Origin: Rebecca billardiae RCC1528 | Lineage: Eukaryota > Protista > Haptophyta | Direction: 5' to 3' | Assembly (NCBI GenBank): GCA_965240325.2 | Contig: OZ251226.1 | Location: 1-64,000, forward strand | DNA: 64,000 nucleotides | Part shown: positions 18,331-59,761 of the stretch, piece after piece | Layout of the letters: every line of letters begins with the position of its first letter | Position numbering within the stretch: position 1 is the stretch's first letter | Notes under the pieces: generated by a model | The model's input: the letters and a program-made list of their open reading frames with translations, nothing else | Told to the model about the DNA's origin: nothing | Database searches by the model: none | Made by a program: the position numbers and the translations under genes

Positions 18331-18450
18331 GATATATATACATATATATATATATATGTATATATATACTTATAATATATTATTAAATATATATATTATT
18401 ATAACGATGACGTTATGGTACTCTTGTCTCTTGCAACGGGCAGGCTGACG
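18331..18450 (-). mobile_element. (TA)-rich tract abutting a degenerate 3' end of the CRE-like element seen at 58.5 kb
   Basis: TAACGAtgaCGTtaTGGTA...TGCAACGGGCAGGC matches the reverse complement of the 58560-58586 terminus, with short insertions. Confidence 0.55.
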
Positions 18451-19237
18451 TCGTCCGCGATCGATCGACTACGTACTCTGCTGTCGGCGATGAGTCCGTC
18501 AGATCCGCCGCCGGACGGCCCGGAAGCTGTACTGCTACTATACTCGGGCTGCGCTAGCTAACCGCCTGCTGGGTTCGCCGGCAGCGGCCGGCCGCGGCCG
18601 CCGCGCACGTCCGTGGCGCCGGCTCGGCGCTGCACTTGCAGCGCCGCGGAACGGGTAATAATTCCGCGTAGTAGCGGCGACGTCGAGTACGCGAGCATCG
18701 TCACAGCCGCAGTCGTACCGTACGAGTCACTACGACTACGCGACGCTACCGGCGCACGGGGCGCTCAACAGTGCCACTCGGGCCCGGCCAGGCGGCCCCG
18801 GGGTATCATCACGTCGGCTGCCAGCCCGCAGCGGGCCGGCAGGCCCTAAGGGGCGGCACCGGCGGCCCGGCGCCCGGCCGCCGGCGGCACTCTGTCGATC
18901 TGGCCGCCGCCGGGGCGCTGCATGCCGCTGTCACAGTTATATAGGCCCGGGCAGCAGCAGGCAGTCTCAACTCACTTGTCCGTCGGTCTCGTGACGGGGC
19001 GGCTACTATATGCTCCCGGCAGTCAGGCGCACACCGAGCCTGCGGAATCTGACAGTGACTGTGACACGGCGGGGCGCCGGCGCCTGCCGGCCGGAGTGTC
19101 AGACGACGTATATCATATCGTCGTCATCACATGATGGCGGCATTCGATCTGCAGCGTGCAGACACACGTCTCTTAGTAGAGCACGAACTCGTCGTCGTCG
19201 TAACAATCATCTGACGTCCGGAGTCAGCCGAGACTCA

Positions 19238-47894: not shown

Positions 47895-48040
<146 letters not shown>

Positions 48041-56759: not shown

Positions 56760-57393
56760 CATCGGACCTCCGACATCGGCCGCATCGTCGTGCCTGAAGC
56801 AACAGATCGACTGGCGTCGTGAGCCGTCGTCGATGCCGTCCTCGCCATCGGCGATTCGGCGTCGGCGCCGTCGTCCACTGATGGACGCGCACCGTACGAG
56901 TCGAGTCGTCCACCATGCGCGCGGTGTGTGCCAGCGCGCGCGCACTGAAGAGGGGCGGGCCGTCATCAGTCCGTCACTGGAGGGCCGCGCCGACGGACGC
57001 CGGGACGCGTCCGCGCTGGCCGGGTGCGACCGGACCTGACGGCGTCGGGCACCTCGACGACAGCGGAGGGGTCGCGCGGAAGCGCACTCGCCGGCGCGGC
57101 CATGATGTCGGCGGACGAGACGCTCTTCCACTCCGGCGGCAGCGCGTGCGACTTGCGGCGGCAGTGGCGCACGAGCATCTCGCGCGAGCCCAGCTTGACG
57201 CCGCACGTCGTGCACGGCAGGGACGAGACGCCGCACAACTTGAGGTGCGCGGTGAGGTCATCGAGCGTGGCGTACGCCTTGACGCCGCAGCGCGTGCAGC
57301 GGTGGCGCCGGATACCCGCGTAGTGCGTGCGCATGTAGTGCTTCTTCGCCTGGTACTTGGACGGGCATTCGCGCGCAGACGGGGCAGGGCATG
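56760..57393 (-). pseudogene. Inverted, truncated and frameshifted paralog of the zinc-finger gene at 58799
   Basis: Near-identical KYQAKKHYMRTHYAGIRRHRCTRCGVKAYA coding sequence; 2-bp deletion (TGCGCGCGAATG versus TGCGCGCGCGAATG) in the first finger; 5' third missing. Confidence 0.75.
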
Positions 57394-57649
57394 ATCTTGG
57401 AGGCGGAAGCCAAAGTGAAAGATCGTCGCGCGCAGTTCTGTCGCTGGCTCGGAGAATTCCAACTCACGAGCTCACTGCTTCCCTCGCGCCAAGAATCTGC
57501 TTTGTGAGTATGAAGCGGATGAGCGACCTAATGAGTGATGGTTCGTCACACACTGATCGATGAGAACCTCGGGGTAAATTTCACATCTGCGCGCAATCAT
57601 CGATATGGTTTTCAACCGCGACAGCCTGAAATGGATCGCAGGTACGACC

Positions 57650-57802
57650 TACAGTTTACTATGTCTTAACGTGCACACTTGGTTAAAACATAGTAAAGGG
57701 GGGCAAGGGGGCTGGCCACTGCTTGGCCAGGGTAGGGCTGGAGGCTTCGGCCGCCAGTCTGACACCCGGAGCCCGTTATTATTATTATTATATATATATA
57801 TA
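57650..57802 (+). mobile_element. Short structured repeat with a (TTA)n/(TA)n tail; SINE-like or a retroelement 3' end
   Basis: 16-bp hairpin 57655-57670/57682-57697, nested stems with a C(UUCG)G loop, tail (TTA)5(TA)6; the first 37 bp recur at 7497-7533. Confidence 0.55.
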
Positions 57803-57934
57803 GCTCCCGTAGGGGGGCAGGGCTGCGGGTGGCGCACTGTCTGACCTGGACGGAAGGCGCGGACGCATTCTATGTGTCTGTTGCACTCTGAGCCTGACGC
57901 TTGTCCGATGCTGCCACGTCGTTAAATATATATA
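57803..57934 (+). mobile_element. 5'-truncated 3' end of a related CRE-like subfamily, bounded by (TA)n
   Basis: Ends CTGACGCTTGTCCGATGCTGCCACGTCGTTAAATATATATA, similar to the 58555-58592 terminus. Confidence 0.6.
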
Positions 57935-58592
57935 GGGTGAGCGACGGCCGCAACGGTGCGGTGCGCCACCGCGCGGAACTCGTCCCGCGCGAGCGGCGCA
58001 AGCAGCTGCAGCTCCTCGACCGCGAGGTCTACGGCACGCTTGAGGGCCAGGTGGGCCCATACGAGGCGCGGCTCGACACCTTCCCCGCGATCGTCCCGAT
58101 TGTCGTGGGGGCGTTCGGCGAGTGGAGCGCGGAGGTGGACCTCACCCTCAAGAAGATCGCCAAGATGGGGCGGGACACGTGGCGCGCGCGCCTCAGCGCG
58201 CCCTCGCGCCCCGCCGCCGAGCGCGCGCTGCTCGGCACCATGCGGCGCGAGCTGGGCATGCGCTGCCTGCGTGGCCAGGCCAAGATGCTCATCGCCCGCG
58301 CGCGCATGGCGCACGTGCGCCCGGGGGCACGCGCCCGCGGGGGCGCTGCATACGACGACTACTTCGAGACGACGGCTGACGACGCGTGGCACCGCGACCA
58401 CCGCGGTGGCGCGTGCGCGTCGACGCCAGACGGTGCGTCGAGCTTCCGCTCGGCGATGGAGTGATGGGCGACTATGAGGGGGGGGACGACGGCGAGGAGC
58501 GCTGATCCTGGTGTTTGTCTCTGCTGCTCGATCTGCTGCTACAGCTTGCTGACTCTGACGCCTGCCCGTTGCATACCACGTCGTTAATATAT
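57935..58592 (+). mobile_element. 5'-truncated CRE-like (RLE-type) non-LTR retrotransposon: C-terminal ORF fragment plus 3' UTR
   Basis: AVRHRAELVP...LLDREVYGT...QVGPYEARL...PIVVGAFGEWSAEV...RRELGMRCLRGQAKML resembles the region C-terminal to the RLE core of CRE-clade ORFs; starts abruptly after (TA)n; stop at 58464. Confidence 0.7.
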
Positions 58593-58798
58593 TAATAACG
58601 ACGTGGTATGCAACGGGCAAGGGGAATTTATTACAGACTTTGAAATTTGGGTCGCAAGCTCGTCGCAATTTTGATGAGATCGAGATATCATACCAATCTT
58701 GAGCCGGGTATTTACCGCCCGCATTCCCGGCCGAACCGCGAAACCTCGGCATCATCGACCTCCTCCTTGCCTCAGTCGTCGTCGAGACCCAAACATCG

Positions 58799-59761
58799 AT
58801 GAACCTCGCGACTCTGCACATCCTCGAAGAGGAGGCGCGGCACGGGCAGGCGCTGCGCCAGACTGCCGCGTACTTCGAAGCGGCCCTCGCCCTCTGTCGA
58901 CGGGCGCCGAGCGTCGGCCTCATGGGCGCGCCTGCCGGTGCCGCACCCTCGCTGGCCGCGCTCTTCTTCGAGTTTGCGAATGCGGAGCCCGCCCCTTGGC
59001 TCCCGCTGGGCACCTTCGCCACCCAGCCCCCGACGCCGGCGCCGCCCTCGGCGCCCGCCGTGCGCTACTTGGCGCCGGTGCCGATCGCCACGCCCATCGA
59101 CGAGCCCGTGCCCCCGCCTACCGTCGGCCAGCTCTCGCCGCTCGAGTTTGAGGAGTTTGCAAGCACGGCCGGGACGCGCTGGGACGAGCCGACGCCCTGC
59201 CCCCTCTGCGCGCGCGAATGCCCGTCCAAGTACCAGGCGAAGAAGCACTACATGCGCACGCACTACGCGGGCATCCGGCGCCACCGCTGCACGCGCTGCG
59301 GCGTCAAGGCGTACGCCATGCGCGAGGACCTCACCACGCACCTCAAGTCGTGCGGCGTCGTGTACCCGTGCGAGACGTGCGGCGCCAAGCTGGGCTCGCG
59401 CGAGACGCTCGTGCGCCACTGCCGGCGCACGTCGCACGCGCTGCCGCCGAAGCCGGCGCGCGCCTCGCCTGCCGCCGTCACGCGCGCGACGACGAGCACG
59501 CCGGCGCGCGACGCCTCGTCGGTCGTCGAGGTGCCCGCCGCCGGCCCGCTTGCGCGCACCGGCCTTGGCGCGGACGCGTCCGTCGGCGCGGCCCTCCTCT
59601 GTGACGGCGCGCCGGCGCACGCTGCGCGCACGGCGGACGAGTCGCACGGCGCTCTGCCGTCGACAGCCGATGGCGCCGAGGCCGATGACGAGGATGGCCA
59701 CGACGACGAGGACGGCTTCTGGGCGTCGCTCGAGGAGTCGCTCTTCTGCTTCAGCCGTTGA
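58799..59761 (+). CDS. C2H2/C2HC zinc-finger protein (STOP1/IDD/ATMIN-type finger array)
   Basis: CPLC...KHYMRTH, CTRC...YAMREDLTTHLKSCG, CETC...LVRHCRRTSH; acidic C-terminus. Confidence 0.82.
   Translation: MNLATLHILEEEARHGQALRQTAAYFEAALALCRRAPSVGLMGAPAGAAPSLAALFFEFANAEPAPWLPLGTFATQPPTPAPPSAPAVRYLAPVPIATPIDEPVPPPTVGQLSPLEFEEFASTAGTRWDEPTPCPLCARECPSKYQAKKHYMRTHYAGIRRHRCTRCGVKAYAMREDLTTHLKSCGVVYPCETCGAKLGSRETLVRHCRRTSHALPPKPARASPAAVTRATTSTPARDASSVVEVPAAGPLARTGLGADASVGAALLCDGAPAHAARTADESHGALPSTADGAEADDEDGHDDEDGFWASLEESLFCFSR

What the first reader, a model, noticed from the sequence alone, without database searches (positions are those of the whole stretch)
57776..58620. Stacked CRE-like retroelement ends suggest a (TA)n-microsatellite-targeting retrotransposon system
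Seen: consecutive modules each end in CGTTA plus a TA-rich tail, and the next begins right after it. The ends at 57934 and 58592 share CTGACGC.TG.CCG.TGC...CCACGTCGTTA, and the longer module encodes a CRE-like C-terminus. A relic at 18.4 kb also abuts (TA)n. Known: RLE-type non-LTR elements are often sequence-specific and 5'-truncated. Inference: several subfamilies home to the rare (TA)n tracts of this GC-rich, gene-dense genome, re-creating their target and using it as a safe harbour. This is the best candidate for an undescribed system in the window.
Basis: partly seen in the sequence, partly recalled or inferred. Interest (0 to 1): 0.75.

Follow-up and report, generated by a model that had tools for sequence, protein, structure and literature searches.

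The report
TA-repeat-homing LINE and its passenger
This stretch is a pile-up of dead tail fragments left by a still-active jumping gene (a non-LTR retrotransposon with a restriction-enzyme-like nuclease) and by a short non-coding passenger element that shares its tail; both insert almost only into (TA)n microsatellites of a very GC-rich alga.

Summary
57724-58619 is a stack of repeat ends, each followed by a TA-rich tract.

- **Long module (57935-58586).** This is the last 652 nt of a 4,692-nt element with one 1,518-aa ORF encoding a reverse transcriptase and a C-terminal R2-type nuclease. The genome holds 462 exact 3' ends but only 7 heads. The four full-length copies I read all have intact ORFs and are 99.6-100% identical.
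- **122-nt module (57803-57924).** This is not a coding subfamily. It is a truncated copy of a ~600-nt non-coding element (233 exact ends) that shares only the last 38 nt with the long element, as a SINE shares its tail with a LINE.
- **Third module (57724-57775).** It belongs to another family of unknown class.
- **TA targeting.** It is real: 25 of 29 mapped 5' junctions abut TA repeats, against a 0.5% background.
- **"CRE-like".** This holds only in the broad sense. The element lacks the CCHC knuckle and N-terminal zinc-finger/Myb domains, and its clade is undetermined.

Microsatellite-specific elements of this class are known for (TAA)n and (TG)n, and TA targeting is known for DNA transposons. 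This is therefore a new variant of a known kind. The scan already found the same element elsewhere in this genome (s1-357922, s1-338783).

The parts
57724..57775 (+). 52-nt end fragment of a third, unrelated high-copy repeat family (class unknown)
   Evidence: 800 first-look candidates. The 40 scored hits include about 40 matches at 96-98% that all begin at this point; the surrounding 57700-57775 folds strongly (-42.8 kcal/mol, z -2.1). No similarity to families A or B.
57776..57802 (.). (TTA)4(TA)n tract between module 1 and module 2
   Evidence: Read directly; listed as a TA tract.
57803..57924 (+). 122-nt 5'-truncated copy of family B, a ~600-nt non-coding passenger element ending ...GCTGCCACGTCGTTA
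   Evidence: at least 42 matches at 100% identity; 36 of 39 other copies start at the same 5' end (L019:808), length about 600 nt; 233 exact 3' ends in the genome; no RNA-gene head, no tRNA, no credible ORF.
57925..57934 (.). AATATATATA tract: tail of B and landing site of the next insertion
   Evidence: Read directly. The junction with the next module has a TA(T/C)AG microhomology.
57935..58586 (+). 652-nt 5'-truncated copy of family A, the autonomous 4,692-nt RT + RLE element (element positions about 4041-4692)
   Evidence: 99.8-100% identical to at least 43 other copies; full-length copies share 4.7-4.85 kb. The copy starts just after the nuclease's catalytic E-V-K motif, so it is a dead fragment.
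57937..58464 (+). Remnant of the last 175 codons plus stop of the 1,518-aa ORF (C-terminal part of the nuclease domain)
   Evidence: The ORF 57901..58464 is identical to the C-terminus of L039 5031..9587.
58465..58586 (+). 122-nt 3' UTR of family A. Its last 38 nt is the tail motif shared with family B.
   Evidence: 3' UTR length; 38 nt, 81.6% identity; no significant fold (z +1.3).
58587..58595 (.). ATATATTAA spacer (residual TA tract)
   Evidence: Read directly.
58596..58619 (-). 24-nt ultra-short copy of the family A 3' end in inverted orientation (tail-to-tail), forming a 27-bp palindrome with the preceding copy
   Evidence: I16, 96% complementary; last row; C8:58590-58612 minus strand.
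18399..18460 (-). Possible old relic of a related tail abutting the TA-rich tract at 18332-18396
   Evidence: sequence. It shares GCCTGCCCGTTGCA and ...CGTTATA with the family A tail; single copy in the genome, so unconfirmed.

Best explanation
The region is a nest built by repeated target-primed reverse transcription into one (TA)n microsatellite.

Family A is an autonomous non-LTR retrotransposon of 4,692 nt. It has a 13-nt 5' UTR, one ORF of 1,518 aa and a 122-nt 3' UTR. The ORF reads: a poorly conserved N-terminus with an RGG-rich stretch, a conserved helical pre-RT domain, a LINE-type reverse transcriptase, and an R2-type PD-(D/E)xK nuclease.

Inferred mechanism: the protein binds its RNA through the conserved 3' tail (...CTGACGCCTGCCCGTTGCATACCACGTCGTTA). 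It nicks a (TA)n tract, and the freed TA 3' end anneals to the (UA)n run at the RNA's end and primes cDNA synthesis. Synthesis usually aborts, which gives 5'-truncated copies from 4.7 kb down to about 20 nt.

Because (TA)n reads the same on both strands, insertions go in either orientation. Because each copy keeps a TA tract on both sides, the site stays a target and fills up with head-to-tail and tail-to-tail fragments.

Family B is a ~600-nt non-coding element that carries the same 38-nt tail. It is mobilised in trans by the family A protein, in the way a SINE is mobilised by a LINE.

Shown: element structure, protein domains, copy numbers, youth, 5' truncation, TA on both flanks, and the shared tail. 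Inferred: cleavage specificity, priming by TA/UA annealing, trans-mobilisation of B, and any benefit of TA tracts as a harmless landing site.
For: - Structure and youth. Four full-length copies share 4.7-4.85 kb at 99.6-100% identity. All four have an intact 1,518-aa ORF with 0-2 differences.
- Heavy 5' truncation. 25 different truncation points occur among 30 loci. Genome-wide there are 462 exact 3' ends against 7 heads.
- Reverse transcriptase. A family profile hits R2 proteins at E 2e-11 and LINE-1 ORF2p at 3e-7. RVT_1 matches 13 of 20 relatives.
- Nuclease. The model (pLDDT 75) matches the C-terminal linker plus nuclease region of R2Tg, R2Pm and R2Bm at Z 12.4-15.1 over 204-214 residues, rmsd 3.8-4.1. 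The next fold, influenza PA endonuclease, reaches Z 7.1. The E...PD...(E/D)xK residues are conserved.
- Target. 25 of 29 5' junctions abut TA repeats against a 0.53% background. 369 of 462 3' ends are followed by at least 6 A/T bases. 3' A/T runs range from 7 to 179 nt, and the junction register varies between TTA|ATATAT, TTA|AATATA and TTA|TATATA.
- Passenger. It has a fixed 5' end, is about 600 nt and lies in TA tracts. It shares only the last 38 nt with A.
- Orientation. Among the first 100 listed ends, 8 neighbouring pairs lie under 100 nt apart: 2 (+,+), 2 (-,-), 3 (+,-) and 1 (-,+).
Against: - No empty (pre-insertion) allele was available, so the exact cut site and any target-site duplication or deletion cannot be read inside a repeat.
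- About 20% of 3' ends have fewer than 6 A/T bases after CGTTA. 2 of 29 5' junctions have no TA and 2 have only two units.
- No DNA-binding module that could read (TA)n was identified. There is no zinc finger, Myb domain or CCHC knuckle, and the pre-RT helical domain matches nothing significantly (best Z 5.0).
- The shared tail does not fold better than shuffled sequence, so what the protein recognises in it is unknown.
- Trans-mobilisation of B rests on the shared tail and target alone.
- No promoter or 5' ribozyme was found, and the 13-nt 5' UTR leaves transcription unexplained.
Confidence: 0.85

Rival explanations
1. The target is chosen by DNA structure or fragility and not by sequence-specific cleavage. 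Long (TA)n tracts extrude cruciforms and break easily, so the element may use pre-existing breaks or recognise the cruciform, with the nuclease playing a minor or structure-specific role.
For: No sequence-reading DNA-binding domain was found. The nuclease belongs to a fold shared with junction-resolving and structure-specific enzymes (one search lists only generic PD-(D/E)xK folds after R2). Unrelated element classes in this genome also sit in TA tracts: other repeat ends abut TA, and other agents' notes say the same. A property of the site would explain that shared habit. TA repeats are documented break sites in another system (title of PMC13645644; not read).
Against: The nuclease catalytic residues are conserved across the whole lineage and all full-length copies keep an intact ORF, which argues that the nuclease is used. 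Junctions also occur at very short TA runs of 3-5 units, too short to extrude cruciforms.
Confidence: 0.1
2. The TA run is only the element's own templated tail. Insertion is random, and the 5' TA seen in stacks is merely the tail of an earlier copy.
For: In the window every 5' TA tract is indeed the tail of the preceding module. Tails are always present at the 3' end.
Against: The four full-length copies I read, and most truncated copies, have 5' TA tracts bordered upstream by non-repeat sequence with no element end. 25 of 29 junctions against a 0.53% background gives P about 3e-53. 5' TA tracts of 40 nt or more occur with no upstream element.
Confidence: 0.03
3. The modules are ends of a TA-targeting DNA transposon or Helitron-like element, as with Micron, TAFT or MuTAnT in plants, and not of a retrotransposon.
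For: TA-microsatellite targeting is documented for DNA transposons (PMC4486113).
Against: There are no terminal inverted repeats. All copies share the 3' end while the 5' end varies over 25 positions. The only ORF is a reverse transcriptase plus R2-type nuclease.
Confidence: 0.01

Closest known systems
R2 (28S rDNA-specific RLE non-LTR retrotransposon; solved structures 8GH6, 9DOU, 9NL2, 9NL3)
   Same: Single ORF with the reverse transcriptase followed by a C-terminal PD-(D/E)xK nuclease. Best sequence-profile hit among solved structures (E 2e-11) and best fold match of the C-terminal domain (Z 12.4-15.1). Site-specific, with 5'-truncated copies.
   Different: No N-terminal zinc finger or Myb domain was detected. 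The CCHC knuckle positions are substituted. The catalytic lysine lies in a classical (E/D)xK motif where canonical elements read D-x-T. The target is (TA)n, not 28S rDNA. The tail is a TA run. No 5' HDV-like ribozyme was found.
Dong (R4 clade, (TAA)n), Togen ((TG)n) and microsatellite-specific HERO families
   Same: RLE-type non-LTR retrotransposons that insert specifically into microsatellites (PMC4640811, PMC3636483).
   Different: The repeat unit differs: (TA)n is self-complementary, so insertions go in both orientations. Those elements come from animals and this one from a haptophyte-type alga. Phylogenetic relation could not be tested because no reference sequences were available in the tools.
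   Same: General layout of a reverse transcriptase followed by a restriction-like nuclease, with strict site specificity.
   Different: From established knowledge, CRE elements target spliced-leader genes, carry zinc-finger motifs and end in poly(A). None of these is seen here. RT phylogeny was not tested.
LINE/SINE partnerships that share a 3' tail
   Same: Family B is short and non-coding, has its own fixed 5' end, and shares only the 38-nt 3' tail and the target with the autonomous family A.
   Different: No tRNA, 5S, 7SL or snRNA-derived head was detected, so it is not a SINE in the strict sense.
MuTAnT, TAFT and Micron (DNA transposons targeting (TA)n in plants)
   Same: Same target and the same proposed 'safe haven' logic (PMC4486113).
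   Different: Those are cut-and-paste DNA transposons with terminal inverted repeats. This is a retrotransposon.

Membership tests
RLE-type (early-branching) non-LTR retrotransposons | LINE-type reverse transcriptase domain | tested here: met
   Profile A2 against PDB: R2 proteins E 2.3e-11, LINE-1 ORF2p 2.8e-7, group II and retron RTs weaker. RVT_1 matches 13 of 20 relatives, best 5e-15; the query itself scores only E 0.014, below the Pfam cutoff. Motifs D..NAFN, SEEGVQQG and DD are invariant.
RLE-type (early-branching) non-LTR retrotransposons | PD-(D/E)xK restriction-like nuclease C-terminal to the RT | tested here: met
   The model matches R2Tg, R2Pm and R2Bm residues about 881-1167 at Z 12.4-15.1, with the next fold at Z 7.1. 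D and K are invariant, and E...PD...(E/D)xK is conserved.
RLE-type (early-branching) non-LTR retrotransposons | CCHC zinc knuckle between RT and nuclease | tested here: not met
   Aligned with two canonical elements from metagenomes (L124, L090) that have C-x2-C-x8-9-H-x4-C, this lineage keeps the flanking LGLPSP motif and one Cys only. No Cys or His is invariant there.
RLE-type (early-branching) non-LTR retrotransposons | No LTRs or TIRs; common 3' end with variable 5' truncation | tested here: met
   25 truncation points; 462 exact 3' ends against 7 heads.
R2 clade | N-terminal zinc finger(s) and Myb DNA-binding domain; 28S rDNA target | tested here: not met
   No Pfam domain lies N-terminal of the RT. 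The pre-RT model (pLDDT 86) has no significant fold match; the best is LINE-1 ORF2p at Z 5.0. The target is (TA)n. Residues 1-380 were not modelled.
CRE clade | Insertion into spliced-leader RNA genes; placement in the RT phylogeny | tested here: not met
   All mapped insertions are in TA tracts. The phylogeny could not be tested because no CRE reference sequences were available.
Microsatellite-specific non-LTR retrotransposons (functional group) | The same simple repeat on both flanks of independent copies | tested here: met
   25 of 29 5' junctions and 369 of 462 3' ends.
SINE (for the 122-nt module's family B) | Head derived from a Pol III-transcribed RNA gene | tested here: not met
   No Rfam match at E of 0.1 or lower, and no tRNA.
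SINE (for the 122-nt module's family B) | Non-coding, with a 3' tail shared with a partner LINE | tested here: met
   The 38-nt tail is 81.6% identical to family A and nothing else is shared. Only ATG-less, Arg/Ala-rich ORFs are present.

The most novel reading that the evidence does not exclude
Target choice may be guided by RNA or DNA pairing and not by a protein reading head. The protein lacks every DNA-binding module known from site-specific relatives (zinc finger, Myb, CCHC). The self-complementary (TA)n target would then be selected through pairing of the nicked TA end, or an extruded TA hairpin, with the (UA)n end of the template. The same TA tract, a run of TATA boxes directly upstream of a 13-nt 5' UTR, may also supply the promoter of full-length copies. 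If so, this large unnamed lineage of marine-protist retrotransposons would be a minimal, re-targetable R2-like insertion machine.
Probability: 0.15. Interest if true: 0.75.

Novelty: new variant of a known kind. Interest (0 to 1): 0.5.

Why it matters
This is a clean, currently active example of a site-specific retrotransposon with a non-coding passenger in a haptophyte-type alga, a group whose mobile elements are barely described. The target is a palindromic dinucleotide repeat, and I found no report of that target for this class of element.

The protein belongs to a large unnamed lineage: 635 cluster representatives at E below 1e-30, with the ten clusters inspected all from unnamed metagenome assemblies. 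It has shed the DNA-binding modules that R2 uses, so it raises a testable question of how such an enzyme finds its site. That question bears on current efforts to turn R2-type proteins into insertion tools.

For genome annotation, it explains most TA-flanked repeats and the many 20-50-nt palindromic scraps in TA tracts of this genome.

Tried and rejected
- **Pfam and PDB sequence searches of the single protein.** Only a sub-threshold RVT_1 hit and nothing in PDB. A profile was needed.
- **Pfam on the window fragment alone.** Nothing.
- **ESM Atlas look-up.** Uninformative unnamed clusters.
- **Conserved fold in the shared 3' tail.** A and B tails fold no better than shuffles (z +1.3 and -0.6), so I dropped the idea of a conserved hairpin signal.
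- **Ribozyme or known RNA at the element ends.** Only sub-threshold hairpin or TA artefacts.
- **tRNA or small-RNA head in family B.** None.
- **Diverged protein-coding paralogues of family A in the DNA held.** None.
The one metagenome scan returned mostly distant RT relatives, and only one locus matched the nuclease profile. One canonical CCHC-bearing element (L124) is flanked by TA repeats, but it lies in an AT-rich contig and is an anecdote.
- **Twin priming as the cause of tail-to-tail pairs.** Orientations of close pairs look random, so independent insertions suffice.
- **The 18.4-kb relic.** Single copy, left unconfirmed.
- **Clade placement by RT phylogeny.** Not done, because no reference sequences of CRE, NeSL, R4 or HERO were available without typing them from memory.

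Full report
**Setting**

The window is the first 64 kb of contig 8 of a 72-Mb, 41-contig genome. It begins with about 1.7 kb of (CCCTAA)n telomere and is 70-88% G+C almost throughout. It is therefore a eukaryotic chromosome end and is not human-like. Other agents' notes call the organism a pavlovophyte (haptophyte) alga. I did not test that.

**What is at 57.7-58.6 kb**

Read directly, the region is a stack of modules in this order:
- 57724-57775, an end reading ...CTGACACCCGGAGCCCG.
- 57776-57802, (TTA)4(TA)n.
- 57803-57924, ending ...GATGCTGCCACGTCGTTA.
- 57925-57934, AATATATATA.
- 57935-58586, ending ...GCATACCACGTCGTTA.
- 58587-58595, ATATATTAA.
- 58596-58619, the last 24 nt of the previous module in inverted orientation. 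This gives a 27-bp palindrome (I16).

The stack lies between two divergent paralogous C2H2 zinc-finger genes, about 180 bp upstream of the start codon at 58799.

**The long module belongs to an autonomous element (family A)**

A genome search with 57936-58592 gave at least 43 matches at 98-100% identity, from 580 first-look candidates. In other copies the similarity continues upstream of the window copy's start, so the window copy is 5'-truncated.

Four of twelve extended loci share 4.7-4.85 kb, and the others stop at various points. The full element is 4,692 nt. It has a 13-nt leader, one ORF of 1,518 aa (L039 5031..9587) and a 122-nt 3' UTR.

All four full-length copies that I could read have the ORF intact, with 0-2 amino-acid differences. 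Genome-wide there are 462 exact copies of the 17-mer 3' end but only 7 copies of the 5' head. Among 30 loci I found 25 different truncation points. This is the signature of a young, active non-LTR retrotransposon.

The window copy holds only the last 175 codons and the 3' UTR. It begins just after the nuclease's catalytic E-V-K motif and is dead.

**The protein**

- Alone, the ORF gives only a sub-threshold RVT_1 hit (E 0.014) and nothing in the PDB.
- Close relatives are rare in the word-indexed search: four metagenome proteins at 30-45% identity.
- A profile search of 1.84 billion representatives found 635 proteins at E below 1e-30 and 5,882 at E below 1e-10. The ten clusters I inspected come from ENA, JGI and Logan assemblies, mostly on 4-7-kb contigs. 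None carries a name beyond 'hypothetical protein'.
- A 20-sequence profile hits R2 retrotransposon proteins best among solved structures (E 2.3e-11), then LINE-1 ORF2p (2.8e-7), then group II intron and retron RTs. RVT_1 matches 13 of the 20 members.
- The RT motifs D..NAFN, SEEGVQQG and DD are invariant among the closest five sequences. So is a D...E.K triad near the C-terminus.
- An AlphaFold model of the last 340 residues (pLDDT 75) matches the C-terminal linker-plus-nuclease part of R2Tg, R2Pm and R2Bm. The scores are Z 12.4-15.1 over 204-214 residues at rmsd 3.8-4.1. The next fold, influenza PA endonuclease, reaches Z 7.1.

The element is therefore an RLE-type non-LTR retrotransposon.

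**How it departs from canonical members**

I aligned it with two canonical elements recovered from metagenomes (L124 and L090), which have the C-x2-C...H-x4-C knuckle and the RPD...D-x-T nuclease motif.
- This lineage keeps the flanking LGLPSP motif but only one cysteine.
- It uses a classical PD...(E/D)-x-K arrangement.
- No zinc finger or Myb domain is detectable N-terminal of the RT.
- Residues 290-345 are RGG-rich.
- The conserved helical domain before the RT (model pLDDT 86) has no significant structural match. The best is the corresponding part of LINE-1 ORF2p at Z 5.0, which is within noise.
- No ribozyme or other Rfam family was found in the element.

"CRE-like" is thus right only for the overall layout. 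The clade cannot be named without reference sequences.

**The 122-nt module belongs to a non-coding passenger (family B)**

It has at least 42 matches at 100% identity and 233 exact 3' ends in the genome. A search with 1.4 kb from L019 showed that 36 of the 39 other copies begin at the same point (L019:808), and all 39 end at the CGTTA end. The element is therefore about 600 nt long with a fixed 5' end. In L019 that end directly follows a TA run.

Family B has no credible ORF, no tRNA and no Rfam head. It shares with family A only the last 38 nt, at 81.6% identity and E 2e-4. That is the relation of a SINE to its LINE, except that no Pol III-type head is visible.

The generic end CCACGTCGTTA followed by six A/T bases occurs 739 times. 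That is more than A's 369 such ends plus all 233 exact B ends, so further tail-sharing families or variants probably exist.

**The first module is something else**

Its last 52 nt match about 40 scored places at 96-98%, out of 800 candidates. It shares nothing with A or B, and the surrounding 76 nt fold strongly (z -2.1).

Other agents report tyrosine-recombinase retrotransposons with folded end signals that also sit in TA tracts of this genome. The module may belong to those elements, but I could not test it. Its "CGTTA" is only CCCG followed by a TTA repeat.

**Is (TA)n the target or only a tail?**

- 3' side. Every copy has an A/T run of 7 to 179 nt after CGTTA. Genome-wide, 369 of 462 family A ends are followed by at least six A/T bases. 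The register varies (TTA|ATATAT is commonest, also TTA|AATATA and TTA|TATATA), as expected if priming occurs by annealing within a repeat.
- 5' side, which is decisive. Of 29 copies whose 5' junction I could map, 25 have at least three TA units within 12 nt upstream, two have two units and two have none. Only 0.53% of window positions meet that criterion (P about 3e-53).
- All four full-length copies I read start a few untemplated bases after a TA tract that is itself bordered by non-repeat sequence. So the 5' TA is not merely an earlier copy's tail.
- Family B copies truncated at three different points are likewise preceded by TA runs.

The "tail only" reading is therefore rejected.

**Stacks and palindromes**

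The held loci show head-to-tail A-A, A-B and tail-to-tail A-B arrangements. Among the first 100 generic ends listed, eight neighbouring pairs lie under 100 nt apart, in all four orientation classes: 2 (+,+), 2 (-,-), 3 (+,-) and 1 (-,+). One 140-nt stretch on contig 1 holds five ends.

Random orientation is what a self-complementary target predicts. The many 20-50-nt scraps point to frequent abortive reverse transcription. The window's 24-nt inverted fragment is one such scrap, and no special mechanism is needed for it.

**The 18.4-kb relic**

On the minus strand at 18399-18460, a sequence shares a 14-mer and a CGTTATA end with the family A tail and abuts a TA-rich tract. It has no other copy in the genome. 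It is plausible as an old relative but unproven.

**Comparison with what is known**

- RLE-type non-LTR retrotransposons are typically site-specific, and microsatellite targets are documented. These include Dong elements (microsatellite repeats; (TAA)n from my own knowledge), Togen for (TG)n, and some HERO families (PMC4640811, PMC3636483).
- (TA)n targeting and the "safe haven" argument are documented for the DNA transposons MuTAnT, TAFT and Micron (PMC4486113).
- Penelope-like elements of green algae also target microsatellites (PMC9977147).
- My full-text searches found no (TA)n-specific non-LTR retrotransposon. The Diacronema genome paper gives only bulk repeat percentages (PMC8379373).
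- Absence from the searched library is not proof of absence, and Repbase could not be consulted.
- The scan itself has already reported this element from other parts of the same genome (s1-357922, s1-338783). My analysis was done independently and agrees.

**Verdict**

I would correct it in three ways: one autonomous element plus a passenger in place of "subfamilies", R2-type and not specifically CRE-like, and a third unrelated family. It is a new variant of a known kind. Interest is moderate. The main open question is how a protein without the usual DNA-binding modules finds (TA)n.

**Limits**

Families B and C and the foreign relatives' flanks were therefore only partly examined.

Noticed in passing
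window 1-1800: The chromosome end has about 1.69 kb of (CCCTAA)n. It is followed by six copies of an 18-nt unit (AGGTAAGGGTTAGGGCGC) that carry the telomere motif in the opposite orientation, then repeated ~180-nt subtelomeric units from about 1970.
   Followed up: no
window 57023-57376 and 59210-59560: An inverted duplication (79-94% complementary) of part of a C2H2 zinc-finger gene brackets the retroelement stack. The left copy lacks the N-terminal 140 codons that the right gene (58799-59761) has.
   Followed up: partly
window 57649-57686; also window 7497-7533, L004 1323-1359, L030 about 2540-2580: A small hairpin-forming repeat (TTTACTATGTCTTAACGTGCACACTTGGTTAAAACATAGTAAA) recurs directly abutting TA tracts. 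It co-occurs within a few hundred nt of the 52-nt family C end at other loci. It may be the folded end signal of the tyrosine-recombinase retrotransposons noted by other agents.
   Followed up: partly
L008, L010, L011, L022 (flanks of family A copies): Yet another repeat end, ...GGTGCGCTATCCTCAGAAAAGTTTAATC, abuts TA tracts in both orientations next to family A copies. At least four or five repeat families therefore share TA tracts as landing sites.
   Followed up: no
L040 about 4800-5015 and L014 about 2170-2260 (contig 7, same locus): One full-length family A copy sits in a TA tract at the centre of an inverted repeat (GGCACGGCCCGCCGACCCCCCCGCCCGCCAGGGCA.AGTTTA ... and its reverse complement). 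The TA tract was itself the middle of a foldback-type element.
   Followed up: no
L124 (soil metagenome contig Ga0137413_10010080), 488-4589: A canonical RLE non-LTR retrotransposon has an N-terminal Cys/His motif, RT, CCHC knuckle and RPD...D-x-T nuclease, with its frame broken into three ORFs. It is flanked by (TA)n on both sides in an AT-rich contig. This hints that TA targeting may occur in other RLE lineages.
   Followed up: partly
genome contig 1, 431124-431264 (coordinates only): Five CCACGTCGTTA ends in alternating orientation lie within 140 nt. This is a nest of ultra-short (about 15-50 nt) abortive insertions.
   Followed up: no
window 47895-48036: A 142-nt (TA)n tract has no family A or B end on either side. 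Long unoccupied targets therefore exist.
   Followed up: no
alignment A2 members: Some metagenomic relatives of the ORF additionally carry RNase H (RVT_3 or RNase_H, 3 and 2 of 20) or an OTU-like cysteine protease domain (1 of 20). The domain content of the lineage varies.
   Followed up: no
L038 5624-5923 and 7691-7990: A 300-nt direct repeat (89% identity, 2,067 nt apart) lies upstream of a family A copy. It may be part of a split-direct-repeat element.
   Followed up: no
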